Positions 1 to 39,890 of a stretch of 64,000 nt of DNA are shown here, in pieces; within the stretch, counting starts at the first letter, position 1; each line of letters starts with the position of its first letter. The stretch comes from Takakia lepidozioides (taxonomy: Eukaryota; Plantae; Bryophyta). Position numbers and translations under genes: made by a program. The notes beneath the pieces are model-generated. The model saw only the letters and a program-made list of their open reading frames with translations. It was not told the origin of the DNA and ran no database searches. The stretch is from contig CM060733.1 in the NCBI GenBank assembly GCA_030704615.1, positions 72,912,001-72,976,000 of the forward strand, read 5' to 3'.

Positions 1-490
1 CATGATCAAGATCAAGATGATTGGAATCAAATACTATCTGAACACAGGGAAATTTCCTGAAGACTACACCAAAGATGGCAGGAGGAAGCTTTCAATGAAA
101 AACAAGCCAAATGTACAAAAGAGGAATTGACTCCATAATGAGAAGATGTGTAAACAAAGAGCAAGCCAAAACAGTAATGCAAGAACTACACGAAGGAATT
201 GTAGGAGGACACTTCAGTTCGGACCTGCTAGCAAAGAAGATATTATTAGCAGGTTACTGGTGGCCTACTGTATTTGGAGATACTTATGAACACTGTCAAT
301 AGTGTGATGTTTGCCAGAGGATGGGACCAGTAGAACGAACTGGGAAAGGTACTCTACACCCAATACTACCAACAGAACCATTTCAGCGCTAGGGGCTAGA
401 CTTCGTGGGACCCATTAAACCTCCAGCAAGGTACACACAAAACCAATACATCATCATAGCCACTGACTACACTACCAGATGGGTAGCCAT
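1..490 (+). pseudogene. Ty3/Gypsy integrase fragment (HHCC zinc finger and start of catalytic core), disrupted
   Basis: HEGIVGGHFS...GYWWPTVFGDTYEHCQ*CDVCQ, then GLDFVGPI...[12 protein letters not shown]. In-frame TAG at 300-302; truncated at ~490. Confidence 0.85.
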
Positions 491-1785
491 GGCAGCGAGC
501 CTCTGCTCTAGCTGCTGAAGCCGGTTGGCCATGCCTTGGTCAACACCCTGACCTCCGCGTCCTTGGCCATGTTGAATTTGCCCTTGGCCTACACCCCGTG
601 CTTGGCCACCTCGTTCTCTTTGGGCTGCTCCCCTCACCCCCGGCCACCATTGTTCCCTTGGAACTGGCCTGGGCGCAACTTGGGATGCAAACCATAACAC
701 TGGGCCTCTCCATGCCCGTGCTTGCCACAATGCCCACGTTGCAACTGTGCAGGCTGTGCATGTGCCGGCCCTTTGCCTCCCTCTGGACAATTCTTCTTGA
801 CGTGGGGTCCTCCACATGTCCAACACACCATATCCGCCCGTTGTTGGCCTGCAAATGAAGGGAGAGACCCCTACATCTGAGGTCATCTCTGCCCTTCCCT
901 GAGCTTCACCTGAGCCCCCTTGTTGCCTTGAGCTTGTTGAGGTAGTGGTTGGCTAGGAGCACCACTACCCCATGGTGTCTCCTTAGCAAATCCTACCATG
1001 ACCACTCGTTCCTCCACCATGTTGAGCTCTATCTGCTCTGCCAGCAAAAATACATTTGCTAAGGTGGGCTGGGCCGCTTGTAGGAGAGTTGCATCCCGCA
1101 CCCTTCTCCTCAGCTCCTTGTTCAATATCCCATACCAGAATTGGACTGCTTGAGCTTCTGTAACCCATTGGGTTACATTTATCAAGCGCCTCATGCGAGT
1201 GAAAGCCTCCCTCAAGCTCTCAGTAGGCTTCCGTTGGAACTCTTGCAAGCTCCGCAACTTCTCTGTCCTCACCCCTTGGTAGTTCCTTCTCAACTCTTCG
1301 AAGAACTCCACAACAGGGTTGAAGGCAGACACGGGTACTGGTGCTGGTGTGGTAGTGGCTTGGGTGGACGTCGTAGCTACGGTACCACCAGTCCCACTAG
1401 TCCCACTGTTGCTTGCTGAAGCTGCCGGTGCAACGGAAGGTGTTGCCACTGCCCTCGTGACTCTAGTGCCCCTAGTGATGAAGTCATAGTCGGGTGACCA
1501 GTACATCTTCCACTCCTCGATCTCAACCTCATGCCCCCGCCTGAACTCATGGCAATCATCCATAGGCAGCCCCTCAAGGTGCTGAAACAGCCCCTTCCAT
1601 GTCATGAAAGGCGTAAATAGTTGTGGATTGCGCATTTGCTGCAAATCACACCAACTATCAAACTCTTGGATAAAATCATCCAACTCGATGGTGTCCACCG
1701 CCCCAGAGTACCTTCGTGGCCCATTGGTAGCTCCATACATCTCTTCCATTGTGTCCCACAACAATGACAAGGAAACAACTTGCAC
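490..1785 (-). pseudogene. Ty3/Gypsy gag (capsid plus zinc knuckles), frameshifted
   Basis: ORF 883-1785 (LDDFIQEFDSWC...LQEFQRKPTESLREAFTRMRRL...FWYGILNKEL). Knuckle-like motifs CWTCGGPHVKKNC and GHCGKHGHGEAQC in ORF 634-831. Confidence 0.8.
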
Positions 1786-2639
1786 CGCCGGTATGAGTCA
1801 TCCTGATTCACAATCCGAATCAGAACCTTCCGTAGAAGACACAGGAGGTGAAGGTGGCCTAAACCGCACACCTCGTCTCGTGTACCCACTAGTATCGCTA
1901 GTGCTCGAACCGACACTATCCCCAGCAATTAATGGCACCTCCGTATTGACACTTTACCGGTCATGAACATGTCACTAACCTCCTCTCCATAAGGTAACCG
2001 GGTAGAGAACCTGTTGCGGCTTATGGTTTGGAATACTAAGTTCATAATATAGCCTACACCTGTACCTGCATCCGCCGCAAGCACTCCTATGGTTGGCTGG
2101 TCATCACCTCCAATCTCACCACAGGAGAAACAATGATGGTCTGGCTGGTCATCACCCCAGCCTCACCATCGACAGCATGCTCTAGGACTGGCCGGTTATC
2201 AAATCCGGACCAATCACCTATAAAAACAAGCGCCCACACAAAACTAGCATGGCGCACAGTCAAGCATACAGGTATGGAGGGGATCCAAACACAAGAAATC
2301 AGAACGACAACTCCCCCACACCAAAAACAACTCCACGGTGTTGCTCCTGCAATGATATCCCAGCCCAAACCTGGACTGACTCTTGCCTCCACCTACGGAA
2401 AGGTCTTGGCCTAATGAGAGGGTAGAAACTACGAAGAAAAGAAGCTAAAGCAATGCCTAACCCCAGCATGCTCTCATCCCAACACTCTTCCTCTCTTCTC
2501 TTCCCTCACTTGCATGACCATGGGAATATCATGAAGATATTCCTTAAACCGCCCTCCACGAGCTTCAAAATCCACCAGTGTCTCCACGAGTCAGCACAGG
2601 CTGTCCACAGGTCAATATGGGCCACCACAGACCAGCACA

Positions 2640-3040
2640 AGCCCACACAGTTTACTGGTCACAGCCATCACAGCCCCACAGACCGCAGCCTGTCACGGCC
2701 CGTCACAGCCCCAAAGGCCACATGTCACAGCCTGTCACAGCCCATCACAACCCATCACAACCCCAAAGGCCACAGGCACAGCCTGTCACAGCCCTACAAA
2801 GGTCACAGTGTCACAGCCCCTCACAGCCCCATAGGCCACAGGGCACAGCCTGTTACAGCCCGCCACAGCCCGTCACAGCCCCACAGGCCACAGGGCACAG
2901 CCTGTTACAGCCCCTCACAGCCCATCACAACCCCACAGGCCACATGGCACAGCCCACCACAGCCTGTCACAACCCGTCGCAGCCCGTCACAGCCCCACAG
3001 GCCACAGGGCATAGTCTGTTACAGCCCGCCACAGCCTGTC
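2640..3040. repeat. Degenerate short tandem repeat (CACAGCC/GTCACAGCCC units)
   Basis: Dense cacagccc/gtcacagcc units. A similar motif occurs in the LTRs at 18930-19100, 26730-26850 and 39650-39745. Confidence 0.8.
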
Positions 3041-3184
3041 ACTTCAAGAGCCATGCTCTATCTAGGCTTGAGATTGAAACCCCAACTCAGAGCACGCTCT
3101 ACAAGTGTCGGACTGTCACATAAGAACAGATCAACCCCTTCCCTTCTCTTCTAGTTCTCTAAAGCTTGAAAACAAAAGCCCAAT

Positions 3185-3500: not shown

Positions 3501-5228
3501 ACCTCTTCAAACAAGAGATATCAGCCCCCTATCTTGGCTCCTTAGCTCCTTGATGCTCTCTAAGACAAGACTAAGCACTCCTAAGCCCTTGCCAAGCTCC
3601 TGAAACCCTAAGGCTTACATTTCCAGCCACAAGACACTCTTCTTGTGGTGCAAGAGCTCTTCTTCCAAGCTCTGAAACCCTAGGTGCACATTCCATGGCC
3701 TTGCCGCACCTCTTAGCTCCTGTTCCAGCCCTGCTCTTGCCATGACAAAAGCCCTCTCAATGCTGAAGCTCGAGATTGAAACCCAATCTCAACATACTCC
3801 ACAAAGTGCACTGATTTGCCCCAAGCCAAATCAGCCCTTTCGCTTGGACTTGCAATCCTGCAGCATGGTGCTTTCATCTCTGAAGCTGAAGATCAAATGC
3901 CAAGGTCTACCACCTCGTAACCCACATCGCCTCCGCTTCTAACAACCAAGAGCTTCACGGTGCTCCTTGCATAACAACCTGGTTTCTCTCATTCTCAAGC
4001 AAAAACCACAAGTGCTACAACTAACTCGTATCTGACACTCACAGATACGAGCTCATCTTTCTCGAGTGATAAAGAGGAAGAATACAAGCAAAAGCTCATG
4101 CGAGCTCACAAAGCTGAAGCATAAACTCATGCATATATAACCTCATCACTCAAATACAAGTCAAGCCAAGTGCACCCCACGCAATGGGAAATCCACACTA
4201 CGACGCCATAGCTAGGCGCGGTGAGGCTCAACTCGAGAAAGATGAGCCTCCCGCGCTTGCCGTGAAGATTACCACTCCAGGGCCTAAATCTGCCTTTACC
4301 CTTGGATTGACACTTGGGCCAATCCCAAATGTCAATATGTAAAAACTAACTATTTCCTGGCTAGTTTCACACTAGTGGTAAAATAACTTGACATGGTGTA
4401 TCAGGCCTGTTTGGCTGAATATATAATGATGATTTTGATCTATGCCTTGGAGTCTCATGGTCATGGGAGAATGGGGAGTTTAGACTAAGCTTTGTTATTT
4501 ATTTCTCTCACTATGTACTAGACTGATCTCATAGAATTACTAGGATCTATTTCTTCACTAGCACTAATGATGAGGGCTATTTGTACTTAGAATAATAACA
4601 TCATCAGATTATATGCAAGATGTTTTCAGCATAGATAAATGGATTAACAATTAGCTAGACTAGTATTACATCAACTGATTATTATGGAAGCATAGAGTGG
4701 AGGCCAGAAATATGACATAGAGTATTTGATTTGATCCTAGATTGATGGACTAACTCGTTACTGATATTAAGACCAGAAAATCATATCCAATAGCAATGCC
4801 TAGTGGAGGGAATATGATCCATGAAGCAAGTGAAATTACAAATAGTTTACATACCTCGTACGATTGGTAGAGCTGAAGCTTTCAAGAGATAACTCCCTTG
4901 CCTGTCATGTATTCAGAAATGCATTAGTCCTGACCCAAGCATCAGTAGATGATAACTGATCTCTTCAAGTCAAGACTAACTAAGTGGCACTCATTGAACG
5001 TTCTTCAGCAAATGGAATGCCACGATATTGAAATGCAGGAAACGAGACGACATATGAACTCCAAGGGATGATGTTTCCTACTGCGCTTGGGCAAAATCAA
5101 CACTAGAATACAATAAGTTTCATGCACAAATTTTACTGTCTATTCTTGGTTTTCTCTTCCGCTGCAGCCTAGGATAGACAGCGTACTAACGGTTGATCAA
5201 GGTGATGTCTGGGTAGGTCCCCTCTTTT

Positions 5229-5239
5229 TGGTATCAGAG
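5229..5239 (+). promoter_or_regulatory. Primer-binding site (initiator tRNA-Met) of the downstream Gypsy element
   Basis: TGGTATCAGAG is the canonical plant iMet PBS, ~1 kb upstream of gag. Confidence 0.75.
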
Positions 5240-6290: not shown

Positions 6291-8267
6291 AATGACGAGC
6301 CCATCAGGAATAGATGCACCCTTTTATGGTAAAGAGGTAGAAGATGTTGATGACTGGTTAGAAAGTTGCAACTAGTAGGAGATGTGAGAGATCTAACAGA
6401 GGACAAGCTATTCAAAGTAGCTAGGCTTAATTTGCAGGGAAGGGCAGATGAGTGGTACAAACGCCAAAATCCCAAGCCTACTAACTGGGAAGAATTTCAA
6501 GAGTTGGTATTGGCGAAGTATGGACAGGTGGATCCCACGGAGCTCAAGATGAAGCTTGACTCCATAAAGCAAGAAAGCAGGCAGCGCATACAGACCTACT
6601 ACAATCGGCTGTCAAAGTTATTCACAAAGGGTCAGATAATAGATCTGGAGAAAAGGAGAAGATTTCTCAATGAGCTACGCCCAGAAATCATGCGCTTAAT
6701 GCTGGGGACAAGATTTGTTAACATAGATGATGCTGTGGAAACGGCACTGCAAGTGGAACGAGGATTGGGGGGCATAGGTGAGACACCTTTGGAGCCATTA
6801 CATGAAGATGACTCTTATGAAGATCACACGTTGGGAGAAACACCGATGGACGGACGACTAGATGCACTAAATGTCACTTTGAAGAAATATTTCGAGAAAG
6901 GAGCTGGAATCCCTGAGAGTTCAGGAAGTAGAACCTCGCCACATGAGCAAAGATTCTGCAACACATGTCATCAGGAAGGACACACTTCAAACTTTTGTCC
7001 AACAAATAGAACACCTATTACATGTGGAAAATGCCACAGAATGGGTCATAGGACAGAAATATGTGGGGTAAGATGTTCGAACTGTAAGACATTGGGGCAC
7101 TTTGAACATGAATGTCAGGCAAAGCAGGAACCAAGAAAGGGAGGACTACCTACCACGAATCTACTCCAAATGATGTACAGTGACGAAGAAGCTGTCTTGG
7201 CAGAACTCAATGAGATATTCGATCATCATGAGATTAATGAAGTAAGGATGCCGAAAAACAGGGTTCCAATACCAACACCAATGAGTGCACCAGGGATGGA
7301 GCGGTCAATTTCAGGAGAGGCATCTGATGGACCAAATGTAACACCAAAAAGTATCTTGCAACCTCGAGTGAACACACCAAAGTGGCCAGAAACAGGAGGA
7401 GGCAGATCCAAGATCCTTAATCATTTTTACAAAGGTAGGATTTCAATGTCGCCCATGGATTTGATTTTGCAAGTGCCTGGAGAATTTGAGAAACTCAAAG
7501 GTCTAGTTAAAGTGGTGGAAAGGTCAATGTCCAGTGACTCTTCCACAGGAGGAACTCGGACAGCACAGACAGTGCAGGACATTTTGAAAGCCCCAAACAT
7601 AGCATATGCCTACAATGGCAGAGTTCGTGCATTACATGTGTTGGTCACAATCGGTGATTTTCAGATCATGGGACAGGTTGACACTGGAGCTATGATCTCA
7701 GTCATAGCAGCAACTACAGTGAGGGATCTCGGTCTGATGAAATCAGTAGTGGCTGATAAAGAAATGTCTTATAAAGTGGCATCAGGAGCAGTGGAGACTG
7801 CAATGGGAAGACTCGATGACATAAGCGTTACAGTGGGTAAGTTGACAAACAGAGTATCCTTCATGGTTGTCAATACAAATACTTATAACATGCTATTGGG
7901 TCTTGATTTCCTAAAGAAATTTGGAGCTCCCATCGATACTGAGACTGAAACTCTAAGAGTAAGGTATGGGCCCGGGGAGGATGTGGAATTCTTTCCACTA
8001 CACACCATCAACCAAGTCGAGCATTTTCAGGAGTTCTGTGAGCATCTGATTGTTGAAACTGAAGAGGATCAAGGAGAAACACAGGTCAATTCAGTGAATG
8101 TCCAGGAAACAGTAGACATGGAAGCAATGACAACAGTCATACCACAAGATGAGGAATGGGGCAGTCCATCAGAAGAGGATTCTGAAGAAAATTCAGAAGA
8201 AGAAGGTGATCAAGAGCATCAGGAACGTCACATGGGGCCAACTTTGAGGAATTTATTGACAAGCTGA
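6291..8267 (+). CDS. Gag (three CCHC knuckles) plus aspartic protease
   Basis: Gag motif LQGRADEWY...WEEFQELVLAKY. Knuckles CNTCHQEGHTSNFC, CGKCHRMGHRTEIC and CSNCKTLGHFEHEC. Protease VDTGA...MLLGLDFL. Probable frameshifts near 6365 and 8240. Confidence 0.9.
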
Positions 8268-9872
8268 ACTCTGGAGAGGAAGAGCTGGCTGATGATGGAT
8301 CCATGGCACTTATAGAGAAGGAGGCATATGATGCCTTGGCACAAATTCTGGTTAGGGATGCATGCTCTCAAGCATATGAGAATGAGCCAATGGATGAACC
8401 AGATGAGGATGATGATTTTATGGATTGGGAGAAGACAGTCCAACAGCAAGAGGTTGAAACACAAAGGGTCTTCATGGCACAGCAAGGAATTAAGGAGGAG
8501 TCTACATCTGAACCAATAAAAACAGCGCAGGAAGAACGTTGGGAACAGATCAAAAGGCGTTTACAGATCAACCCTGGGCTCACGAGAGAACAACGACAAC
8601 AACTTCTGGAGATAATCGAAGCAAATCAAATGGCTTTCGCCTTGAACAAAGCAGATCTGGGATTTTGTACAGCAGCTGAACATGCTATAGATACCCAAGG
8701 ATTTCCACCCTGCAGGAGTCAGCCTAAGCGATTGTCTGAATGGGAAGAGGATGAAGTACAACGACAAATTGAGGTGCTGATTCAGCAAGAAAAGATGCGA
8801 GAAAGCTCTTCGGAATACTCATGTCCAGTAACTTTACCACCAAAGAAAGACGGCAGCAAACGCTTTTGTGGGGATTTCAGACCCCTCAATCAGCAAACAA
8901 GAAGGGACTGCCCATCATTCAAGATGTACTACGACAGTTGGGGAAATCCCAGTGGTTCTCAGCTTTGGATCTTCAAAGTGGTTTTTGGCAAATCAAAATG
9001 CGTGAAGAGGATATCAAGAAGACTGCAGTCATTACATGGAGAGGCCTTTTTGAATGGACAGTCATGCCATTCGGTCTGAAAAACGCAACTGCTACCTTCC
9101 AGAGAACTATGAACAAGATATTGGCTCAGGAGATTAAGGACCATGTGAAAGTTTTTGTTGATGACATCAACATTCATAGTCCAAAGTGGGACAGTCATCT
9201 GAAACATGTCATGGGTGTTTTGAAGAAGATGCAGGAGTACAATCTCAAGTTAAATCCAGACAAGTGCGAATTTGGAAACCAGGAACTTGTATTCCTGGGT
9301 CATGTGGTTACCAAGGAAGGGATCAAACCAGATCCAAGGAAGGTGATTGCAATACAGAAGTTTCCCATACCAAGGAATGTAACCACTGTAAAAAGCTACC
9401 TGGGGGCCACCAACTACTACAGGTGCTACATGAAGGAGTATGCCCAAGCTGCGAGGCATTGCGACTTAAGCTGATCGAGGCTCCTATCCTGGTATGACCT
9501 GATTTTCTTAAACCTTTCATTCTTGATGTTGATTGGTCAAAGAAAGGGGTAGGTGCTGTTTTATCACAAAAAGAAGGACGAAGAGAACACGTGATTGCTT
9601 ATGCTAGTAAGGCATTGTCCGAAGCTCAAAGGAACTATCACCCTATAGAGGGAGAATGTTACGCTCTTGTTTGGGGAATCCTACACTTTCGCCAATATCT
9701 TTATGGCACATCATTTGTTGTTCGAACGGATCATAAGCCATTGGAATGGCTGGCTACAGTTAGCGACGCCTATGGAAGAAGAGGTAGGTGGATCATGATG
9801 CTACAGGATTTTGATTTCAAGATACAACACAGACCAGGGATGAAGCATGGGAATGTTGATGCTTTTAAGTAG
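8240..9872 (+). pseudogene. Reverse transcriptase and RNase H, copy 1 (frameshifts, deletion, stop)
   Basis: KKDGSKRFCGDFRPLN, LDLQSGFWQI, MPFGLKNA, FVDDINI; RH LDVDWS...YASK...ECYALVWG...RTDHKPL. Spread over ORFs 8303, 8821, 9186 and 9591. Confidence 0.9.
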
Positions 9873-12837
9873 GTTTCTAGTAGAGACTGAACCAGACAGA
9901 AGAGACCCTGAGATACTGAGCACAGAAATCACAAGGCAAGGAAAGGAAGAGAGTGCCACTCAGCTTTTATTGGAGTTGTCTCTTGAGGAAGATGTTGCAC
10001 ATGCCATCTTGATAGACCTACATCAGACTGACAGCACAGTGTTAGGAGTGAGACAGCGAAGGTTGAAAGAAGTGAAGACTCATGAAATAGATGAAATTCA
10101 CTACTACTTGTTGGCCTGGGCCATTTGGCAGTTCAAAGACTACTTACATAAGCTGCCTTTTGTGGTAAAAACTGACCTACAACCTCTCAAATGGCAGGAA
10201 GCAGGAAAAGTCAGAGGGACAGACTTGACTGATGGATTTATCTTTACTGTGGTGAGTCACCAAGCAGCTCCTGAACAGCAACAAACTGCGAGTGAAGAAA
10301 GCTGTAGTCAGTCCCCTGCAGTTACCAAAACAGCCTACCATAGAGGGGTCGAGAGTAGAATGAGATATGCAAGCAGTACGTCAGCAGGTAATGTCTTAAC
10401 CCTGACGTCAGATGAACAGTACCTAGGCTTGTGGGAGAAGAAAAGAAAACCAGAGGAAGAATATGAGGACACGGAGGAAGCATCCTCAGGTTCTGACACC
10501 TCTAAATCTGATAAAGATGAGGAGATGGGAGGCTCTGAGGAGAGTAAGGAGGTAGAAACAGCACTGAGGGATGTTGAGGAAATAATAGACGATGTCAACC
10601 TAGGGGAGGACTTGTTCGAGGACCAAGGGATGTCTGAACTCCTTCAGGAAGAGACCCATAAGAGCATGGCTGCTGCCATAATACAGGAAGCTTACCAGAA
10701 AGCTTGGAATGGTGAACTAGGGAACAACAACCTAGAAATAGAGGATGACTTCCATGATTGGAATCAGGTTGTCAAACAAGAGGAAGGACAGAGAATGGCT
10801 AACTCTGTAAGCCAGGTGGAGGGAAAGAATTGGGAACCCAGTCAAGAGGAAGAAATGGAGAGTCGTTGGAGAAGTCTGAAATCCAGACTGCACATCAACC
10901 CAGAACTGGCCCCAGAACATAGGATAGAGCTGGAGCAAGAGCTGAAAGCAAACCAGGAATGCTTTGCTCTTAGCAAGGCTGACTTGGGATACTGCAATGA
11001 GGTAGAACACACAATTGACACACAAGGTTTTCCCCCTTGCAGAAGTCGTCCCAGCCGCCTATCAGAATGGGAGGAAGACGAGGTCCAAGGACAAATTGAG
11101 ACTTTGATCTCACAAGGCAAGATGAGAGAGAGTAGTTCAGAATGGTCGTGTCCAGTTACCCTTCCACCAAAAAAGGATGGATCCAAGCGGTTTTGTGGTG
11201 ATTTTAGGCCAGTAAACCGTTTAACCAGAAGGGACTCTTACCCTATGCCATTAATTCAGGATGTTTTAAACCGGTTGGGGAAAGCCAAGTGGTTTTCTGC
11301 GCTGGATTTACAATCTGGTTTTTGGCAGATCAAAATGGACGACCGAGACATAGGCAAAATAGCAGTGATCACAAAGAAGGGATTGTATGAATGGCTAGTC
11401 ATGCCATTCGGGCTAAAAAATGCCACTGCTACCTTTCAGAGAACAATGAATAGAGTGCTCAAGGAAGAAATCAAAGATTGCGCTAAGGTTTTTGTAGATG
11501 ACGTCAATATCCATAGCAAGGACTGGGGAGATCACGTGGGACATATAAAGAGAGTATTGAGCAAGGTTAGAAAGGCCAATCTTAGGCTCAATCCGGACAA
11601 GTGTTACTTTGCCAACTTACAGTTGGTATTCCTTGGGCATGTGATCTCTGAAGAGGGAACGTGGCCTGATCCAGATAAGATAGCTGCTATTGAAAGGTTT
11701 CCCTTGCCCAAAAACCACACTGCTCTCAAAAGCTACTTAGGCATGACAGGGTACTATAGGCCCTATGTCAAAGGATATGCTGGAGTGGCAGTACCCTTGT
11801 TCACTCTAACCAAGAAGGATGTGAAGTTTATCTGGGGTGCAAAGGCACAAAACGCCTTTTCTGCCTTACAGGTGAAGTTGGTAACTGCTCCCATCCTGGC
11901 AAGACCAGATTTCTCAAGACCGTTCGTCTTGGATGTTGACTGGTCCATCAAAGGAGTAGGGGCAGTCTTGTCACAAAAGGAGTATAAAAAGGAGAGGGTC
12001 ATTGCATACGCCAGTAAGGTACTATCTGATGCTCAGCGCAAATATCACCCTATGGAAGGTGAATGCTATGCCCTGGTGTGGGGAGTATTACACTTTCGGC
12101 AGTACCTGTATGGAACCCCTTTTGTAATCAGGACTGATCACAAACCACTGGAGTGGTTGGCAACGGTAAGTGACGCATATGGACGCAGGGGTAGATGGAT
12201 CATGATGTTACAAGATTTTGAGTTTAAAATTGTTCACAGAGCAGGTGCTAGGCATGCTAACGTAGATGCACTAAGCAGGTATCCAGTGGGACCAGCTGAG
12301 GAAACCGAGGAAATCGAGGTATACTCTACTTCTCTGTACAGTCAGAAAAGAGAAGGGAGAAAGAGGGATGGAGCTTATCTTCTTAAGCTAGCTTGGGATA
12401 GGGGTGCCATCAATGCTTCGTTATTTCAATTTAAGGAGGGGAAGGAGGAGTTGAGAGAAGAAGCTCATAGGCAAGTAGGGTATAGCAGTGAAAAAGGGGA
12501 GATGATTTGCAAAAGAGAAGAGTACTATGCATGTGTATGGGGCCTTTGGCACTTCAAGAAAATACTATTGGGAAGTCATTTTTCTTTGGAAACAGATCTA
12601 GATCCATATTGGTGGCTATACTCAGAGCATCACATAGGCATAGACTTACTTGGTGACTTTTCATTTGAGTTCGTTCCGGGCATAGTAAGATCTTCCACAG
12701 GTGGAATGTTGACCAAGGATCATGGCATATTGAAGGGAGAACTGAAACCAGGCATAATGCCAGATGGAGAAGGAAAGAGGGTGACTTTTGCTGCACAGAC
12801 TTTTGCTACAAAAAAAAAAACAAGGAAAGGGTATTGA
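9847..12837 (+). CDS. Linker plus reverse transcriptase and RNase H, copy 2 (open frame)
   Basis: 996-aa ORF with LDLQSGFWQI, MPFGLKNA, FVDDVNI, FLGH, and RH LDVDWS/RTDHKPL/NVDALSR. Confidence 0.92.
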   Translation: MGMLMLLSRFLVETEPDRRDPEILSTEITRQGKEESATQLLLELSLEEDVAHAILIDLHQTDSTVLGVRQRRLKEVKTHEIDEIHYYLLAWAIWQFKDYLHKLPFVVKTDLQPLKWQEAGKVRGTDLTDGFIFTVVSHQAAPEQQQTASEESCSQSPAVTKTAYHRGVESRMRYASSTSAGNVLTLTSDEQYLGLWEKKRKPEEEYEDTEEASSGSDTSKSDKDEEMGGSEESKEVETALRDVEEIIDDVNLGEDLFEDQGMSELLQEETHKSMAAAIIQEAYQKAWNGELGNNNLEIEDDFHDWNQVVKQEEGQRMANSVSQVEGKNWEPSQEEEMESRWRSLKSRLHINPELAPEHRIELEQELKANQECFALSKADLGYCNEVEHTIDTQGFPPCRSRPSRLSEWEEDEVQGQIETLISQGKMRESSSEWSCPVTLPPKKDGSKRFCGDFRPVNRLTRRDSYPMPLIQDVLNRLGKAKWFSALDLQSGFWQIKMDDRDIGKIAVITKKGLYEWLVMPFGLKNATATFQRTMNRVLKEEIKDCAKVFVDDVNIHSKDWGDHVGHIKRVLSKVRKANLRLNPDKCYFANLQLVFLGHVISEEGTWPDPDKIAAIERFPLPKNHTALKSYLGMTGYYRPYVKGYAGVAVPLFTLTKKDVKFIWGAKAQNAFSALQVKLVTAPILARPDFSRPFVLDVDWSIKGVGAVLSQKEYKKERVIAYASKVLSDAQRKYHPMEGECYALVWGVLHFRQYLYGTPFVIRTDHKPLEWLATVSDAYGRRGRWIMMLQDFEFKIVHRAGARHANVDALSRYPVGPAEETEEIEVYSTSLYSQKREGRKRDGAYLLKLAWDRGAINASLFQFKEGKEELREEAHRQVGYSSEKGEMICKREEYYACVWGLWHFKKILLGSHFSLETDLDPYWWLYSEHHIGIDLLGDFSFEFVPGIVRSSTGGMLTKDHGILKGELKPGIMPDGEGKRVTFAAQTFATKKKTRKGY

Positions 12838-14701
12838 TCAATCAAGCTCTGTCAATCTGGTGAGGGAGGGTATTTGGGAGGATAAGGGTGCAGGAAGGAT
12901 AGAGGCTACTGCAATCAGCAACAAGGAAAGGGAGCATCTGATGCCCTCTTGTCCCACCATCCATGTGATTACCCGAGGATCTCGTGCTCGTGATAAGGAG
13001 CTAAGCGAGGTACATCCAGCCTGTGAACTTGTGGAAGAGAGATCGAACAATGAAAAGGGAAGCTTGCAAGAGACACCATTCCTTCAACACTTGACAAGCA
13101 CTCCAACAACAAGAAGAACGCGGGTGACTTCCTCATCAGAATGCCCAGCCAAGGAAAACATGGGGGGTGAGTGTTCCACCAAGACGTTTTGTTCTTCAGA
13201 CAGTGATGGAACAAGTGGTTCAGAACAAGACACTTCTTCTTGCAACAAGATTGATGAAGGGGACTGGGTACCATGGACCGCACCCACCAAAGCTACTCAG
13301 ATGTCATTATTACGTGAGGCTGAAAGATGGGGGAAAAGCTCTCTCATCAACTCTGACCATCATACAACAGCTGTTAAGGAGGAAAGGCAACCTGATGTGC
13401 TTGATGATGTGGAAGTCATGCACCTCTTATGTTTTGGAGAAGTCAATGACTACCTGACAAAAGAGGAGAGCAAGAGAACCAAGAGGCGGGCAAGGCAGTA
13501 CTCCTATCTCAAAGGTGAGGTCTACTTTGATGGAAGGGTAGTTCCACCAAGAACTGACAGAGGGGCAATAATCACTGAAGTACATGAAGCCACTGGCCAC
13601 TTTGGAGTTAGAAGAACACAAGAGGAGATATGCCAACGTTATTTCTGGCATGATAGAACAAAACTCATCAGGCAAGTACTCAAGGGCTGTGGTAAATGTC
13701 AGATGGCCAAACAGAACGGAGTGTTGCGCTCAGGTAGCTCAAAACTTCACAGCATTCCAGTAGTGGATCTGTTTTTCAGAGTTGCAATTGACACGGCAGG
13801 ACCATTACCTATAACCAGCAGGGGCAATCAGTACTTTCTGGTGGCAATCGATCACTTCTCAAAATGGATAGAAGCTGCACCAGTGGCAGATCATACAGCA
13901 GCCCTTGCTGCCCGCTTTCTTGAGGAAGAAGTAATTGACAGGTATAGCTGCCCACATACGTTGCTCACTGACAATGGCACAGAGTGGGGAGGTGAGTTTG
14001 AAGATACATGCCACGAATACGGTATAAAGAGGGAGCATAGCGCCCCCTACTGGCCTCAGTGTAACGGTATGGTGGAAAGGGTCATTAAGTCTCTCAAACA
14101 GAGCATCACCACCCTAGGAGTTGGAAACGACACTGAGTGGGATCAGAATCTCTATAAGGCCCTGTTTGGTTACAGAATGGGTGTCCATGCTTCCACTGGA
14201 TTCTCACCTTTTCAGGTACTTACTGGTAGAATTCCCAGGCTGGGAATTGACAACAGGTTGCATTTTCTTACAACACCAGTAAATTATGATGGATCTGTAG
14301 CAGAGGTCACACTTATGATGCAGCAGAAAATCCAGCTTCTCACAGAGATGAAGGCAAAGCTACGAAAGAGTGTGAAGAAAGGGCAGCGTCAACAGGCAAG
14401 AGATTATGAAAGAAGGCATCAAACAGGGCATCCCTACTGCACGTTGATGGAGAACAGCAAGGTAATGATGTTGAGGCCTGGAAAGAGGTCTTCCATGACA
14501 TCTCCATGGGAGGGACCCTATGACTTTTTGGGATACAAGGATGCAGGAAGCACAACCAAGACTGGAGAAGCTGCACGAAGATGCAGGTTGAGAGATGGAG
14601 CAGACAAGGAATGGGTAAGAAGTAGGAGGGATTTAAAACCCTTCATACCACCAATAGGTGTTCAGCCGTTAAAGGTGGTCAGTGAGGACCCTGACACTTA
14701 A
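12788..14701 (+). CDS. Gypsy integrase (HHCC, DDE, GPY); no recognisable chromodomain
   Basis: HEATGHFG...CGKCQ; AIDTAGP, TDNGTEW, NGMVER; WEGPY. Frame change at the A-run 12810-12820. Confidence 0.92.
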   Translation: MLHRLLLQKKKQGKGIDQSSSVNLVREGIWEDKGAGRIEATAISNKEREHLMPSCPTIHVITRGSRARDKELSEVHPACELVEERSNNEKGSLQETPFLQHLTSTPTTRRTRVTSSSECPAKENMGGECSTKTFCSSDSDGTSGSEQDTSSCNKIDEGDWVPWTAPTKATQMSLLREAERWGKSSLINSDHHTTAVKEERQPDVLDDVEVMHLLCFGEVNDYLTKEESKRTKRRARQYSYLKGEVYFDGRVVPPRTDRGAIITEVHEATGHFGVRRTQEEICQRYFWHDRTKLIRQVLKGCGKCQMAKQNGVLRSGSSKLHSIPVVDLFFRVAIDTAGPLPITSRGNQYFLVAIDHFSKWIEAAPVADHTAALAARFLEEEVIDRYSCPHTLLTDNGTEWGGEFEDTCHEYGIKREHSAPYWPQCNGMVERVIKSLKQSITTLGVGNDTEWDQNLYKALFGYRMGVHASTGFSPFQVLTGRIPRLGIDNRLHFLTTPVNYDGSVAEVTLMMQQKIQLLTEMKAKLRKSVKKGQRQQARDYERRHQTGHPYCTLMENSKVMMLRPGKRSSMTSPWEGPYDFLGYKDAGSTTKTGEAARRCRLRDGADKEWVRSRRDLKPFIPPIGVQPLKVVSEDPDT

Positions 14702-14979
14702 AAAAAGGAGACACACTACATATGTAGTGTGAATGCAGGGGGTAAAAATTCAAGTTTTTGTTTGGCATCAGGTTTCGGCACTACTACAAAGGGAGTGCCC
14801 TTCGTGCTAATGAAGGGGAGGAATTGTCCATAACTTGAGGTAATTCCATGGAAAGACTATGCTATTGATCTGCCAAGAACAAAATATGGCTAAGTTATGA
14901 CATGCACCTTTTTCATCCCTAGGATGAATGATTTTCATCCATGATGTTGAACCCTAGAAGCAGGATGTGAAATTCGAAG

Positions 14980-15525
14980 GGGAAGAGTGCGTGTATCTTT
15001 TCGCAGCTGCTGCAGTGGTGTTGGCAGCACATGATATCTGAGAAAGTTCCACCTACGCAAAGGGTATCAGCTTGTTTTTAAGAGAAACGTTAAGAGCTCC
15101 TGCTTGGCTTTCTGTGCAAGAAGAAGCGGTGCCGCCTTCTTCGTAAGCAATGATCAAACCTGAGGGATCAGGTTTGTGATAAGGGCGGTGCACCACTGCT
15201 GTCGCCATTGTCTTGATGAGCACATTAATGAGAAGATGGAGCGGCTCAGCAGGTGTTGGGGGATGAGAAATGCAGGCTGGTGTGTATAGCGCCTCAGGTT
15301 GTCTGTGATCAAATCTTGTAGCTGCTGTCTGTTTTTGAGCTTTAGGACCAGATCACTTTGTAAGGGAAGAGTGTAAGCATCTTTTCGCAGCTGCTGCAGT
15401 GGTGTTGGCAGTACAGCATATCTTAGGAAGTTCCACCTGCGCAAAGGGAATCAGCTTGCCTTAAAGAGCGACGTTAAGGGATCTGGCTTGGCATTCTGTG
15501 CAAGAGGAAGCGGTGCCGCCTTCTG
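14980..15525. repeat. Two ~160-bp direct repeats downstream of the PPT
   Basis: ATCTTTTCGCAGCTGCTGCAGTGGTGTTGGCAG...GAAGCGGTGCCGCCTTCT at ~14980-15140 and ~15365-15525. Confidence 0.85.
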
Positions 15526-16799
15526 GTGTGTATGGCGCTTAAGCTATCTATAATTAAGTTTTGTATCTGCTCTCTGTCTTAAGGGCTGTAGGACCAGATC
15601 ACTTCATAGGGAAGAAATGCACATGTAGAAGGATAGGGTAGAGGTTGGCAGGCACAAGGATGTGCCAGCAGCTGAAGCAGAGCCGTCATGCCTTAATGAG
15701 GACTGGAATCACGATAAGAAGAAACGTCGGAAATGGCTGACGAGGGAGAGGACAAGGTGCCTTCTTGACAGGCAGACCCACCGCTTCAATGAGTATAAGA
15801 CAGATAAGTTTGAAGAGTGGCCCCCCTTTTTGGTGACTTAGAAATCGCTTTGTGAAGTTTGGACTGTCTCTTGTATGTAGTAAGAGACACTGACATGTGA
15901 GGAAGAAAAAGAGCTTTGGAAATGGAATGAAGACACTGGACTTCAAACCAGGATGGACTGGAGATGGATGCACCTGCTGTTACATTGTACAGTAGGAAAA
16001 ATGAATGGAAACAGGGTTGACTCGTTGCTGGGACAGAATGGTTGCTGTTGTTGTATTCTTGTTCTTTGTTTCAGCGTCATGAGCTTGTACAAACAATCTA
16101 GCCTGGGATGTTGACACATTGCAGTCAATGTGGAACTAGCTTAGTAGGTAGAGGAAACCAGTGAGGGTTAGATAGAACTGTTTGGAAACAACAAGAAGGG
16201 ATGATGTGGATGGGGCAGAAAAACCAACATCTGTTTGGGTTTGGATCTGATTCTCAGAGTGCTCTCAGCATGTGAACCACTGAGGTTCACAGTTGATGGG
16301 AAAAAGAGAGCTGTCAGGGTGTGTAAATTGAGACCTGTAGAAGGGTTGAGAGCTGTCTTGGGCAAATGGCTACACCTGGGAAAAGTGGAGTGTGAAGCAT
16401 CTGTCATTGGCAAGAGAGGGACTGATAAAAGGGCTGATTATATCTTGTGTGACCAAGGTTGATTCCAATGCTGGGTGCACTGGATGCTTGGCTGAATGCG
16501 CATTGCATTGCATCATAGACATGCTACAGTGGAAAGAGTGAGGAACCTACTCACCCTGAAGGAAAGAGAGGCGGAGAGAGAAAAGGACATAAGGGAGAGA
16601 GCTGACCAGCAAGAGGGGATGGTGAGGAATGGATGATTGGGGAGGTAAGATAAAGAAAGCCTGAACCCATGAAGGGCCAAACTGGTGGGCCTGCAACTCA
16701 TGGCAGATCTGAGTTGCCTCCTTCTAAATCGTGATCTTATTACAAAGGGGCTTCCACGTGTTGCTGACCAAGGGAGCTGCCCACAAGGGCAGTGGTCAT

Positions 16800-18257
16800 C
16801 ACTGACGTAGGGCTGGTTGCATCACTGAAGACAGCATGGTAACATGGCTGGTGCAGTGTACCAGGGAGAGGATGTCGTGTAGAAGTAGAACCACGGGTGA
16901 AAACAATACAGACTCCCCATCCATGTCTTCTCTTCCGCTGCGGCGTGGATGAGGATTGTGTGAACTCTGATCATGAAGGACCTGAGGGAAACCCACACCG
17001 AGTGACGATGGTTGGATCACTGAGAGGAGAGCTCCTTTCCTTCCCTCCGATTGACCTGGGGAGGAGCACAACTAGACTTGCACAGAAGGGGATTCACGCC
17101 CCTTCTTTTCACACTACACAGGTCCATCGGGTTGGGATGTCCTGGTTGTAGTCTCAACCTCAGCTGTTGGGTCTACTTCTTCATACTTTTCCTCTTCCAA
17201 TTTCTTCTCTCTGTTTTCATCCTCCAAGTTCTTCTTCTTCACTCATGTAACTCAACTGCAATGGTGTTGGAGAGTCTGAACTCTCCGTTGGCTCTGCCAC
17301 ATCCTCTCCTCCTTCTTCACCTTCCGCTTCAGAAACTGGAGTTCATGCTTTTGGTGTTCCATGCCAACTCTTATCAAAGATTTCTGTCAAATCTTTTATC
17401 CAGGGATGTACCTCAGATCTTTCACCTCGTGATTGATCTTCTTCCCGTACCAATTCCCTGAATCTTTCTTGCAAAGAAACAGAAGGAGTGGCATCCAACT
17501 CTAGTTCTTCCGGTATGGGTGATGTACTCTTTGATCTTAATGGTGTGAGAGGTCCAGATGATTCCCCTATGTCTATTCCTCTCTCCCAAAGATATGGATA
17601 ATTAGCTTTCAGATAGCTTTCTCTTTTTGCTGAATATCTTTGGCGTCTAGCTTCTCTTTCATCACTCATGTCCCATGTCTTTCATTTCTTTTTAATGTGG
17701 CAATAACCAAAACTCTCTTCTGTAATATCTCTCGTATATGCCTGGGTTTCTTTCAAGCTTCAATGCACCCTTGGCTATACTTGAAGTCTCCGTTACCATA
17801 TAACCATATGGCAAACAAGTCTGGAAAGCTGTTCTTGGTGTGAGTTTGATCCACAAAATATCCTTTGGAATCCAATTCTTTACCAGTACAAGCTCTTCAT
17901 GCATATGAGTATAAACATTCACCTTTCTTTCCTCCCAGCCTTCAAACTCTACTCGCTTAATGGATAGTAAGGCTATCACATAAACCAATGTTGGTAACCA
18001 CCGTGCTCTTCCTCTATAGGCTACCTAATAAATCTTTATCACTCCTTTCTCCAGACCCCATTCCGGATCAGCATCATGCACTCGCTTAAGAATATTTTCT
18101 TACAACCGTCTGGCAATTCCAAGAACCTTTGAAAGAATTGTTTGGACAATCTTTCTTCCTTCATTCCACAGGGAATTTGATTCACTTCAAATTCTTTAAT
18201 GGTCCAACCACCATGATCCCACCAGATGCCTGTCACATCTGGTTGTTCATGACTCAG
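16800..18257 (-). pseudogene. Degraded 5' internal region/ORF of the LTR element at 18279-19219
   Basis: Lies immediately downstream of the PBS. Protein-like fragment MSDEREARRQRYSAKRESYLKANYPYLWERG (17669-17343); no domain recognised. Confidence 0.4.
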
Positions 18258-18278: not shown

Positions 18279-19219
18279 TGTCGCGCGGCTTTAATTCACC
18301 CATCCCTTCGCTATCCGAGGCGGAAACTCCAATAGAAGAGTTGGAAATCTCTAAGTACTCAGCCCGCTCAGAACAATCAGTCATGACCTACAGCTAGTGT
18401 ATCATGGGGGTGTTTCCTATTTGTTTTCCTTTCCGCATTCATGTTAGCTAGCTACCTTACTATTGATAATTAAGTATCAGTTTGCTTCATCAATCTATTG
18501 GATTCCATCAACTCATCCATTCATTCCACAGCTTCACTCAGATCTCTCTACACAGTGTGAGTATGAAGTGTGTATCAGATTAATATCTATCAAGTATCAG
18601 GCTGAAGCCATGGTGTCTCTAATCTACTCTACATTACAATTCTATAGCTTGCATTCATCAAGTAACAACAGATCGTCACTTCTCCTACTCCGTGCTCTTC
18701 ATCTTTCCCCTCAGAGATGTGCTCTTCCCCCTATTTCCAAGCCCTGATGCCAGAAGTCCCCCACCCCGAAGTGATCTCCTGCCGCCTCCTTTCAGTCCTT
18801 GCTCCTAGTTTTATCTTCCTACCCGTTGTTCTAACCGCTTCCCTCACTAACCGTCGTCCGTGAACTAACATGTTCCCATTCGCAGGTGTTGTTCCCACAG
18901 TCGTTCCCTGTCCTGCTATCCGTTCCCTATGGTCGTGACAGCTGTGTGAAACTGTGACTGGCTGTGACCGGCTGGTCGGGCTGTGACTCTGTGCGACTGT
19001 GTTTGTTTGTGTCGGGCTTTGTGGCTGTGTCGGCTGTGACGGGCTGTGTCGGCTGTGCGAAGCTGTGACGGGCTGTGTTGGCTGTGACGGGCTGTGTAAC
19101 CCCCTTCTAAAGTGCGCTGCTGTCACCCCTAAAGCTCATGTTGGTCTCAGTCTGTGCAAAAATTAAGGGTACCCTACAGATCCCGTATAAGTGTCTAAGT
19201 CCCAGACAGTCCTCTAACA
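18279..19219 (-). mobile_element. 5' LTR (family A), TG...CA
   Basis: Minus strand starts TGTTAGAGGACTG and ends CGCGACA. Homologous to 39021-39866 and 26606-26847. Followed by the PBS. Confidence 0.88.
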
Positions 19220-19521: not shown

Positions 19522-20021
19522 NNNNNNNNNNNNNNNNNNNNNNNNNNNNNNNNNNNNNNNNNNNNNNNNNNNNNNNNNNNNNNNNNNNNNNNNNNNNNNN
19601 NNNNNNNNNNNNNNNNNNNNNNNNNNNNNNNNNNNNNNNNNNNNNNNNNNNNNNNNNNNNNNNNNNNNNNNNNNNNNNNNNNNNNNNNNNNNNNNNNNNN
19701 NNNNNNNNNNNNNNNNNNNNNNNNNNNNNNNNNNNNNNNNNNNNNNNNNNNNNNNNNNNNNNNNNNNNNNNNNNNNNNNNNNNNNNNNNNNNNNNNNNNN
19801 NNNNNNNNNNNNNNNNNNNNNNNNNNNNNNNNNNNNNNNNNNNNNNNNNNNNNNNNNNNNNNNNNNNNNNNNNNNNNNNNNNNNNNNNNNNNNNNNNNNN
19901 NNNNNNNNNNNNNNNNNNNNNNNNNNNNNNNNNNNNNNNNNNNNNNNNNNNNNNNNNNNNNNNNNNNNNNNNNNNNNNNNNNNNNNNNNNNNNNNNNNNN
20001 NNNNNNNNNNNNNNNNNNNNN
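19522..20021. other. Assembly gap (500 N)
   Basis: Run of N. Confidence 1.
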
Positions 20022-26567: not shown

Positions 26568-26584
26568 ACCGTGAGGACACGGCT

Positions 26585-26847
26585 TTTTGAGAGGGGAAGG
26601 GGTAATGTTAGAGGACTGCTTGGGACTTAGACGCTTTTACGGGATCTGTGGGGTACCCTTAATTTTTACACAAACTGAGACCAACAGAAGCCTTAGGGGT
26701 GACAACAATAGGCTTTAGGGGGGAGAGACACAGCCAACACAGCCCGTCACAGCCACACAGCCAGTCACAGCCCGACACAGCCCGACACAACCCAACACAG
26801 TCGCACAACCAATCACAGCCCGACACAGCCCGTCACAGCTCGACACA
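26585..26847 (+). mobile_element. PPT plus truncated 3' LTR (family A)
   Basis: GAGAGGGGAAGGGGTAA, then TGTTAGAGGACTG at 26606, matching the start of LTR 18279-19219. Confidence 0.85.
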
Positions 26848-26877
26848 GTCGCGCGGCTTTTACTCACCCATCCCTTC

Positions 26878-39020: not shown

Positions 39021-39890
39021 TGTCGAACGACTTTTACTTACCCATCCCTTCGCTATCCGAGGTGGAAACTCCAAGATAGAAGAGTTGGATATCTCTAAAC
39101 ACTCAGCCCGCTCAGAACAATCAGTCATGACCTACAACAAGTGTATCATGGAAGTGTTTCTTGTTTGTAATCCTTCTTGCCTTCATGTCAGCAAGTTACC
39201 TTATTTTAAGTATCAGATTGCTTCAGCAATCCACCAGGTTCCATTCACTCTTCCATTCATTCCACAGCTTCCCTCAAATCTTTCTACACAATGTGAGTAT
39301 GGAATATGTATCAGATTAAGTTATATCAAGTAACAGGCCGAAGCCATGGTGTCTCTAATTTGCTCTACAGTATCACCCTACAGCTTTGCATGTATCAAAC
39401 ATCTACAGATCGTCTCTCCTCCTTCACCGTGCTCTCCATCATTGCTCCCGTTCGTGCTCTCCGCCTGATCTCCTCTACTCCCGACCAAGAAGTGCTCTCT
39501 CCCAGAAGTGTCCTCCATGTTGCTGCTCTGCCTAATTTATCTGTAAACTGTTCTAACCACCTAACTAACTAATTGTCACCCAGGAAGTAAGCACGTTCCC
39601 TCTGCAAGTGTCGTTCCCTGCCAATGATAACCGTTCCCTATATATGCTGTGCCAAGCTGTGTCGGGCTGTGATTGTGACTGGTTGTGTCGGACTGTGTCG
39701 GGCTGTGACAAGCTGTGTCAAACTGTGTCAAACTGTGACTGACTATGTAAGCCTGTCTACCATCCCCAAGGCCTGTGCTAGTCCAAGTCTACCATACGTA
39801 AGTCTGTGATTAAGGGTACCCCACAAAACCCATAAAAGTGTCTAAGTCCCAGACAACCCTCTAGCATTATCCATCCCCCTCTCAAAAAAC
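39021..39890 (-). mobile_element. 3' LTR (family A, 39021-39866) with PPT (39867-39890)
   Basis: Minus strand GAGAGGGGGATGGATAA, then TGCTAGAGG...TCGACA; homologous to 18279-19219. Confidence 0.88.

What the first reader, a model, noticed from the sequence alone, without database searches (positions are those of the whole stretch)
8240..12837. Gypsy retrotransposon with two tandem, long-diverged RT-RNase H units
Seen: gag-PR-[linker-RT-RH]-[linker-RT-RH]-INT with no LTR, gag or integrase between the units. Both keep LDL/FVDD and RH acidic motifs. Amino acids are strongly conserved while codons differ extensively (LQSG has Ser AGT in one copy and TCT in the other). The RH1-to-RT2 junction lies in one open 996-aa frame. 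Established: Ty3 RT works as an asymmetric dimer. Inference: either a lineage encoding a heterodimeric or tethered RT with specialised subunits, or an in-frame recombinant of two sister families.
Basis: partly seen in the sequence, partly recalled or inferred. Interest (0 to 1): 0.8.

Follow-up and report, generated by a model that had tools for sequence, protein, structure and literature searches.

The report
Two gypsy retrotransposons fused into one
The two reverse-transcriptase units are real, but they most likely come from two related, separately inserted jumping genes that a deletion later joined, and the front unit is broken, so this is an ordinary genome fossil and not a two-enzyme element.

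Summary
The tandem arrangement is real. After gag-protease come two in-register modules of about 2.3-2.4 kb, each holding linker, RT, RNase H and a degenerate second RNase H-like piece. No LTR, gag or integrase lies between them. The modules are 61-80% identical in protein, and their synonymous sites are fully randomised.

The dual-enzyme reading does not hold:
- Unit 1 is a pseudogene, with two deletions that shift the frame, one in-frame stop and a frameshift at the end of RH1. RH1 is therefore not in the 996-aa frame.
- The two ends of the locus do not match. A conserved U5 end plus PBS lies at 5229-5239. A PPT plus LTR start lies at 14700/14723. The sequence upstream of the PBS does not align with the 3' LTR (14723-~17109). 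A single-RT relative has a 755-nt LTR pair at about 97%.
- Reverse transcription always makes two identical LTRs, so this locus never transposed as one unit.
- Disabling lesions are lopsided: 5-6 in the 5' half and one, at an A11 run, in the 3' half.
- All nearest relatives carry one RT, and no second copy of the junction was found.

Best reading: a DNA-level fusion of the 5' part of element A with the 3' part of a younger sister-family element B.

The parts
5149..5228 (+). 3' end of the 5' LTR (element A); its start was not found
   Evidence: It ends in the clade-conserved U5 motif GTCCCCTCTTTTT directly before the PBS. The relatives L001 and L004 have the same arrangement. It does not align with 14723-17109 except for a 27-nt box.
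5229..5239 (+). Primer binding site TGGTATCAGAG (initiator tRNA-Met type)
   Evidence: Read directly from the sequence. The same 11-mer sits about 0.9 kb upstream of gag in L001 and L004.
6292..8264 (+). gag-protease of element A, with a frameshift near 6360-6372
   Evidence: Pfam finds Retrotrans_gag and aspartyl protease. The ATG and the first ~23 codons are in frame 1 and the rest in frame 0. The relatives' gag aligns across the break.
8240..8908 (+). Unit 1 linker and N-terminal part of RT1 (frame 2)
   Evidence: tblastn with unit 2 gives 51% identity over 224 aa. It follows protease, as in the single-RT relatives.
8908..9453 (+). RT1 core (frame 1), bounded by two frame-shifting deletions
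   Evidence: Pfam RVT_1 E=8.5e-31. It is 65% identical to RT2. Compared with unit 2 and the relatives, 3 aa are missing at 8908 and about 24 aa at 9453-9456.
9456..9866 (+). RH1 (frame 0) with an in-frame stop at 9495-9497 and a frameshift at its end
   Evidence: Pfam RT_RNaseH E=8.1e-25. It is 80% identical to RH2, and the stop is visible in the alignment. The frame change falls in a T run at about 9860-9866.
10027..10290 (+). rh'1: degenerate second RNase H-like piece of unit 1
   Evidence: BLASTP to RH2 gives E about 4e-9. The Pfam RT_RNaseH hit is below threshold at 17.8 bits. Catalytic carboxylates are lost.
10291..10569 (+). Interval that holds the A/B junction
   Evidence: No homology to the post-rh'2 region was detected, and only an acidic-composition resemblance to the pre-linker-1 region.
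10570..11244 (+). Unit 2 linker and N-terminal part of RT2 (element B)
   Evidence: It lies inside the open frame 9844-12834.
11245..12273 (+). RT2-RH2, intact
   Evidence: Pfam RVT_1 2.3e-29, RT_RNaseH_2 2.4e-35 and RT_RNaseH 9.6e-44. It is 60-66% identical to the best database relatives.
12364..12735 (+). rh'2: degenerate second RNase H-like piece of unit 2
   Evidence: BLASTP to RH2 gives E about 4e-10. Pfam RT_RNaseH scores 21.2 bits. See the alignment.
12810..12820 (+). A11 homopolymer run where the frame changes from 1 to 2
   Evidence: This is the only frame break in the 3' half.
12785..14698 (+). Pre-integrase spacer and integrase (element B)
   Evidence: Pfam Integrase_H2C2 and rve. 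The relatives' integrase aligns at 13289-14383.
14700..14712 (+). Polypurine tract
   Evidence: The sequence is AAAAAAAGGAGAC, directly after the integrase stop. It resembles the PPT of L004.
14723..17109 (+). 3' LTR (element B), with internal tandem repeats at 14973-15615
   Evidence: The start TGTAGTGTGAATG resembles the LTR start of L004. The end CACGCCCCTTCTTTT resembles the clade's U5 end. Repeats were seen. There is no second copy in the window.

Best explanation
The locus is a fossil chimera of two Ty3/gypsy elements from two long-diverged sister families of the same genome.

- Element A contributes the end of its 5' LTR, the PBS, gag, protease, linker, RT1, RH1 and rh'1.
- Element B contributes linker, RT2, RH2, rh'2, integrase, the PPT and the 3' LTR.
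- The two were inserted separately, in the same orientation, next to each other.
- A later deletion or illegitimate recombination at the DNA level removed A's integrase and 3' LTR together with B's 5' LTR, gag and protease.
- The break lies within about 10291-10569 and happens to be in frame.
- A was already older and decaying. B was young and is almost intact.

Shown: the anatomy, the broken state of unit 1, the non-matching LTRs, the deep divergence under purifying selection, and the single-RT relatives. Inferred: the order of events and the deletion mechanism. The element does not function as a dual-RT unit.
For: 1. Ends that are not a pair. A clade-typical U5 end plus PBS sits at 5229-5239, and a PPT plus LTR start at 14700/14723. 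The best local alignment between 4000-5238 and 14699-17200 is a 27-nt box with score 32. The same scoring gives 1390 for the 755-nt LTR pair of the relative L004. Neither LTR has a mate elsewhere in the window. Reverse transcription, even with recombination between two RNAs, yields two identical LTRs (PMC6894440).
2. Lopsided lesions. The 5' half has five clear lesions plus one ambiguous one. The clear ones are the gag frameshift (~6360-6372), 8908, 9453-9456, the stop at 9495 and 9866. The frame change at ~8225 is ambiguous. The 3' half has only the A11 run at 12810-12820.
3. Two old lineages. RT1 and RT2 have saturated synonymous sites and dN of 0.13-0.36. They are equally distant from the outgroups. 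In the careful ML tree their branches are 0.18 and 0.19, in an unresolved three-way split with the relatives' clade.
4. Single-RT relatives. All nearest relatives read gag-PR-linker-RT-RH-INT.
5. No second junction. None was found in 5.8 billion proteins, in metagenome contigs or by exact look-up.
6. Known process. Deletion by illegitimate recombination is a known route of LTR-retrotransposon decay in plants (PMC1940013).
Against: - The host genome could not be searched. Parental single-RT families A and B, and the absence of other dual copies, are therefore predicted and not shown.
- The start of the 5' LTR was not located.
- The in-frame junction is a 1-in-3 coincidence under this model.
- Five of the seven lesions cluster in unit 1 itself, while 1.9 kb of gag-protease has only one. 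This is somewhat uneven for simple ageing of element A.
- The lesion asymmetry is only marginally significant. My own binomial estimate is about 0.05 for 6 of 7 lesions in 48% of the length.
- No reads were available to exclude a chimeric assembly join.
Confidence: 0.68

Rival explanations
1. A recombinant or duplicated element was made during reverse transcription, by a template switch between co-packaged RNAs of two sister families. It inserted as one unit and may have founded a small dual-RT family. This copy later lost or exchanged one LTR and decayed.
For: The units are exactly colinear and the junction is in frame. Template switching is known to build complex LTR-retrotransposon structures (PMC1950507; PMC6894440).
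Against: Such a product would carry two identical LTRs at insertion, and none is present although both termini are recognisable. The uneven lesion load of the two halves is not expected for a single insertion. No other copy of the junction was found.
Confidence: 0.13
2. This is an old gypsy lineage that encodes two specialised RT-RH subunits (a heterodimeric or tethered RT), both kept by selection. This copy is a dead member of it.
For: Both units show strong purifying selection over a divergence that saturates synonymous sites, and they have equal protein branch lengths. Motifs are retained in both.
Against: The same signature is produced by two independent families. Unit 1 is broken, which blocks translation of everything downstream. 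The LTRs do not match. A dual lineage that old should be visible in relatives, yet none of the 120 or so closest public proteins or their loci has two RTs. Public multi-RT gene models from other clades are mostly concatenated neighbouring elements.
Confidence: 0.05
3. This is an assembly artefact, in which two separate elements were joined wrongly by the assembler.
For: The scaffold has an N gap at 19522-20021. No read-level check was possible.
Against: The units are only 58-71% identical in DNA, far too low for a false overlap. The junction interval has no repeat elsewhere in the window.
Confidence: 0.08
4. A tandem duplication arose in place at this locus, and the two copies then diverged here.
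For: The arrangement is head to tail with a period of about 2.3-2.4 kb.
Against: Divergence in a dead insertion is neutral. Here third positions are randomised while 61-80% of residues are kept. That pattern requires long selection on both copies as working genes.
Confidence: 0.01

Closest known systems
Rearranged or truncated LTR retrotransposons produced by illegitimate recombination and deletion in plant genomes (PMC1940013; Devos et al. 2002, as cited there)
   Same: Parts of elements are removed at the DNA level. What remains are internal-region fragments and LTRs without mates.
   Different: Here the deletion spans the boundary between two neighbouring sister-family elements. It happens to keep both RT-RH regions colinear and in frame, which mimics a dual-RT element.
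Complex LTR-retrotransposon insertions made by template switching (Sabot and Schulman 2007, PMC1950507)
   Same: Two internal domains lie head to tail in one locus.
   Different: Those complexes share an LTR between the internal domains and arise during reverse transcription. Here no LTR lies between the units and the outer LTRs differ.
Single-RT Ty3/gypsy clade found on JGI/ENA metagenome contigs (for example loci L001 and L004; proteins P0001-P0029)
   Same: The gene order is gag-PR-acidic linker-RT-RH-spacer-INT. They share the tRNA-Met-type PBS, the conserved U5 end and the PPT/LTR-start motifs. RT-RH identity is 57-66%.
   Different: They have one RT-RH and no rh' piece. Their RH-INT spacer carries other conserved motifs. 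L004 has matched 755-nt LTRs.
Dual RNase H architectures of retroviruses, Tat/Athila and Odin elements (PMC9040795)
   Same: There are two RNase H-like domains in tandem, one of them catalytically degenerate.
   Different: Here the downstream copy is the degenerate one and is a diverged duplicate of the element's own RH. It is not an acquired second RNase H.

Membership tests
Ty3/gypsy (Metaviridae) LTR retrotransposon | Domain order gag-PR-RT-RH-INT with Ty3-type RT and RNase H | tested here: met
   Pfam hits in that order. Both RTs sit in a 100/100-supported clade with gypsy relatives.
Ty3/gypsy (Metaviridae) LTR retrotransposon | PBS next to the 5' LTR and PPT next to the 3' LTR | tested here: met
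   PBS at 5229-5239, PPT at 14700-14712, with motifs shared with L001 and L004.
Single intact insertion of one LTR retrotransposon | Two LTRs that are near-identical direct repeats | tested here: not met
   The best local alignment is 27 nt (score 32, shuffled maximum 27). The L004 control pair scores 1390.
Single intact insertion of one LTR retrotransposon | Matching target-site duplications at both ends | not tested
   The start of the 5' LTR could not be located.
Element encoding a two-subunit (heterodimeric or tethered) RT | Both RT-RH units translatable in the same polyprotein | tested here: not met
   Unit 1 has three internal frame changes and one stop.
Element encoding a two-subunit (heterodimeric or tethered) RT | The architecture recurs in other copies or in relatives | tested here: inconclusive
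   It is absent from the public protein and metagenome collections and from the relatives. The host genome itself could not be searched.
Template-switch complex insertion (LTR-internal-LTR-internal-LTR) | A shared LTR between the two internal domains | tested here: not met
   No LTR or non-coding block lies between the units. One open frame runs from 9844 to 12834.
Dual RNase H of the Tat or retrovirus type | An added, catalytically competent second RNase H downstream of a degenerate original one | tested here: not met
   The upstream RH keeps the carboxylates. The downstream rh' has lost at least two of them and is most similar to the element's own RH.

The most novel reading that the evidence does not exclude
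A true dual-RT gypsy family exists in this genome, with two anciently diverged RT-RH modules kept by selection (for example as specialised subunits of the Ty3-like asymmetric RT dimer). The present locus would then be a decayed member that later lost its matching LTR.
Probability: 0.05. Interest if true: 0.7.

Novelty: new member of a known kind. Interest (0 to 1): 0.15.

Why it matters
As read here it matters little. It is one more example of how deletions in TE-rich plant DNA can join parts of neighbouring elements.

It is also a useful warning. A colinear, in-frame RT-RH-RT-RH arrangement with strong amino-acid conservation and scrambled codons is exactly what two sister families look like when fused. 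Checking the LTR pair tells the cases apart.

One small point of biological interest is that both parental families carry a catalytically dead second RNase H-like domain that their nearest relatives lack.

If a genome-wide search nevertheless found many copies with matched LTRs, a natural two-RT retrotransposon would be of real interest for how Ty3-type RT dimers work.

Tried and rejected
- **Reads:** No run ids were available, read laying was not used, and the junction is not confirmed by reads.
- **Earlier notes of this scan:** searches by place, words and sequence found no other dual-RT note in this genome.
- **Protein searches:**
  - The whole 996-aa ORF found no hit covering more than 63% of it.
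  - The junction query found no hit spanning rh'1 into linker 2.
  - RT2-RH2 alone found nothing above 66% identity.
  - Families A and B are therefore not in the public protein collection.
- **Other look-ups:** the exact look-up of the 996-aa product is not on record.
- **Metagenome contigs:**
  - The junction query found nothing.
  - The RT2-RH2 query returned only relatives at 34-47% identity, which were not informative.
  - I set aside one contig labelled as from a human-skin metagenome (L071) and did not analyse it on its own.
- **Representative search for proteins with two RT stretches:**
  - Many exist, but most read RT-RH-IN-RT-RH-IN or have protease or gag between the RTs. These are concatenated neighbours in gene models.
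  - Others are 93-100% identical recent duplicates.
  - None belongs to this clade.
- **LTR pair search:** repeats, blastn at word sizes 11 and 7, k-mer diagonals and Smith-Waterman all found no pair.
- **CpG depletion as an age marker:** the A and B halves do not differ usefully (0.35 against 0.29).
- **Sister-group test:** the topology test of RT1+RT2 as a clade did not finish, so their relationship stays unresolved.
- **Frame change near 8225:** I first counted it as a lesion. It is ambiguous, because L001 and L004 also have protease in frame 0 and RT in frame -1, while other relatives have both in one ORF.
- **Handling of RT1:** for the tree it was read through only with X at each break.
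Full report
**1. What is there**

On the + strand the window holds one gypsy-type coding array.
- Pfam finds Retrotrans_gag and aspartyl protease in 6366-8264.
- RVT_1 is in 8821-9471 and RT_RNaseH in 9591-9869.
- A second RVT_1 plus RT_RNaseH_2 and RT_RNaseH lies in the 996-aa ORF 9847-12837.
- Integrase (H2C2 and rve) is in 12788-14698.

A tblastn of the 997-codon frame against 8000-10400 shows that 8240-9866 is colinear with 10570-12273. The whole linker is 51% identical over 224 aa, RT 65% over 182 aa, and RH 80% over 137 aa. tblastx offsets are 2327, 2337, 2407 and 2421 nt. Nothing resembling an LTR, gag or integrase lies between the two sets.

**2. An extra layer: the rh' domain**

Each RH is followed, about 30 residues later, by a second and much more diverged RNase H-like piece, which I call rh'. 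It lies at 10027-10290 and at 12364-12735.
- Each rh' matches RH2 by BLASTP (E about 1e-9 to 1e-10 in the small local search).
- Each matches Pfam RT_RNaseH below threshold, at the same profile positions (17.8 and 21.2 bits).
- In the alignment both have lost at least two of the four catalytic carboxylates, while keeping a core Y..W....F...L....F..TD..P..W pattern.
- The nearest relatives have no rh'. Their RH-to-integrase spacer carries other conserved motifs.

The repeated module is therefore linker-RT-RH-rh'.

**3. State of the two units**

Unit 2 lies wholly in one open frame (9844-12834). Unit 1 does not.
- Its linker is in frame 2 (8240-8908), RT1 in frame 1 (8908-9453) and RH1 in frame 0 (9456-9866).
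- Compared with unit 2 and with outgroup proteins, unit 1 lacks 3 residues plus a frame at 8908.
- It lacks about 24 residues plus a frame at 9453-9456.
- It has an in-frame stop at 9495-9497.
- It changes frame again inside the last motif of RH1, in a T run.

Outside unit 1:
- gag has a frameshift near 6360-6372. The ATG at 6292 and about 23 codons are in frame 1 and the rest in frame 0. The relatives' gag aligns across the break.
- The frame change between protease and linker 1 (~8225) may be a lesion or a clade feature. L001 and L004 show the same 0 to -1 relation, while other relatives have protease and RT in one ORF.
- The only break downstream of 9866 is at an 11-A homopolymer run, 12810-12820.

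**4. How the units diverged**

- DNA identity is 58-71% and third positions differ at 55-64% of codons.
- Nei-Gojobori dS is undefined (saturated), while dN is 0.36, 0.28 and 0.135 for linker, RT and RH.
- At 108 four-fold sites under identical residues, 29% share the base, against 27% expected at full randomisation.
- RT1 and RT2 are equally far from all outgroup proteins.
- In a careful ML tree their terminal branches are 0.18 and 0.19. They form an unresolved three-way split with a 100/100-supported clade of 19 relatives (stem 0.43), all inside a 100/100 clade (quick tree).

Both RTs therefore spent nearly all of their separate history under purifying selection. The damage to RT1 is recent. 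This rules out divergence in place after a local duplication. It does not say whether the two evolved inside one element or in two families.

**5. Relatives**

- The best public proteins are 57-66% identical. Their loci read gag-PR-linker-RT-RH-INT with one RT.
- No protein covers the rh'1-to-linker-2 junction.
- No metagenome contig encodes the junction.
- The exact ORF product is not on record.

A HMMER scan of 1.84 billion representatives with RT2-RH2 brought many proteins with 2-5 RT-RH stretches to the top. Mapping their domains showed three kinds.
- Most read RT-RH-IN-RT-RH-IN.
- Some have protease or gag between the RTs.
- Others are 93-100% identical duplicates.

These are gene models that run through neighbouring or freshly duplicated elements. 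None is from this clade.

**6. The ends decide the matter**

The relative L004 has a 755-nt LTR pair at about 97% identity. Its 5' LTR runs straight into TGGTATCAGAG, and its 3' LTR starts just after a purine tract behind the integrase.

The window has the same landmarks.
- A U5-type end (GTCCCCTCTTTTT) plus TGGTATCAGAG sits at 5229-5239, about 1 kb before the gag ATG.
- After the integrase stop comes AAAAAAAGGAGAC (14700-14712), then an LTR start TGTAGTGTGAATG at 14723.
- A U5-type end CACGCCCCTTCTTTT lies near 17109.

Yet the sequence upstream of the PBS and the 3' LTR do not align. Smith-Waterman finds only a 27-nt box (5149-5175 against 16925-16950; score 32, shuffled maximum 27). The L004 pair scores 1390 under the same scoring. 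The last 80 nt before each U5 end are plainly different. Neither LTR has a mate elsewhere in the 64 kb.

Reverse transcription creates two identical LTRs even when it recombines two RNAs (PMC6894440). With so few lesions in the coding part, a true pair would still be about 95% or more identical. The 5' and 3' ends of this locus therefore belong to two different elements.

**7. Reading**

The simplest account of all this is as follows.
- An older element A (5' LTR end, PBS, gag, PR, linker, RT1, RH1, rh'1) and a younger sister-family element B (linker, RT2, RH2, rh'2, INT, PPT, 3' LTR) lay head to tail.
- A deletion removed everything from behind rh'1 of A to just before the linker of B.
- The break lies in 10291-10569, where homology to either parental context fades.

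This account explains five things:
- the non-matching LTRs;
- the lesion load of 5-6 in about 4 kb of A against one (a homopolymer) in about 4.4 kb of B;
- the signature of two independently selected RT lineages;
- the shared rh' (a trait of both families);
- the absence of any other dual copy.

Deletion by illegitimate recombination is a well-documented fate of plant LTR retrotransposons (PMC1940013). The in-frame join is then a 1-in-3 accident.

**8. What remains open**

- I could not search the host genome, so the predicted parental single-RT families were not seen.
- Lesions cluster in unit 1 more tightly than simple ageing of A predicts (five of seven in about 19% of the coding length). 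I have no firm explanation for this.
- A dual-RT family that later lost an LTR at this copy is not excluded, but it needs extra events and has no support from relatives.

**9. Verdict**

The heterodimeric-RT idea is not supported. The "two sister families" idea is right in substance, but the product is a dead DNA-level fusion and not a working recombinant. It is an ordinary kind of TE fossil, with new gypsy families as its parts.

Noticed in passing
window 10027-10290 and 12364-12735: Both RT-RH units are followed by a catalytically degenerate duplicate of the RNase H domain (rh'). The nearest single-RT relatives lack it, so it looks like a trait of both parental families. It is a mirror image of the retroviral connection domain, with the active copy first and the dead copy second.
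   Followed up: partly
window 12810-12820: An 11-A homopolymer run sits exactly where the reading frame passes from the RT2-RH2-rh'2 frame to the integrase frame. It could be a length error, a slippage mutation or a slippage site.
   Followed up: no
window 159-497 (+): An integrase-like fragment, 26-30% identical to the relatives' integrase. It is a remnant of another gypsy element upstream.
   Followed up: no
window 2626-3058, also 26738-26848: A C-rich tandem array with a 10-nt sub-period (CAGCCC/GTCACAGCC-like units), with a related patch about 24 kb downstream.
   Followed up: no
window 14973-15615: Tandem repeats inside the 3' LTR: 168-nt copies at 85% identity with 384-nt spacing, plus a second pair.
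   Followed up: no
window 19522-20021: An assembly gap of 500 N, 2.4 kb beyond the 3' LTR.
   Followed up: no
window 25728-26839 vs 40765-39646; 18279-18706 vs 39021-39443; 25338-25655 vs 44037-44359: Copies of another dispersed repeat family at 75-82% identity, one pair inverted. They are unrelated to the gypsy locus.
   Followed up: no
loci L001, L004 and proteins P0001-P0029, P0290-P0405: An abundant clade of single-RT gypsy elements on JGI/ENA metagenome contigs that also carry intron-split eukaryotic genes. The spacer between RH and integrase is conserved (EWLG, CCFGINH and YYD.RQQLELVLAAQ motifs). The source organism is unknown.
   Followed up: partly
proteins P0214, P0230, P0247, P0254, P0203, P0268 (public gene models): Predicted proteins with two RT-RH sets that are 93-100% identical and only 300-560 residues apart. 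These may be recent internal tandem duplications or assembly artefacts in other genomes.
   Followed up: partly
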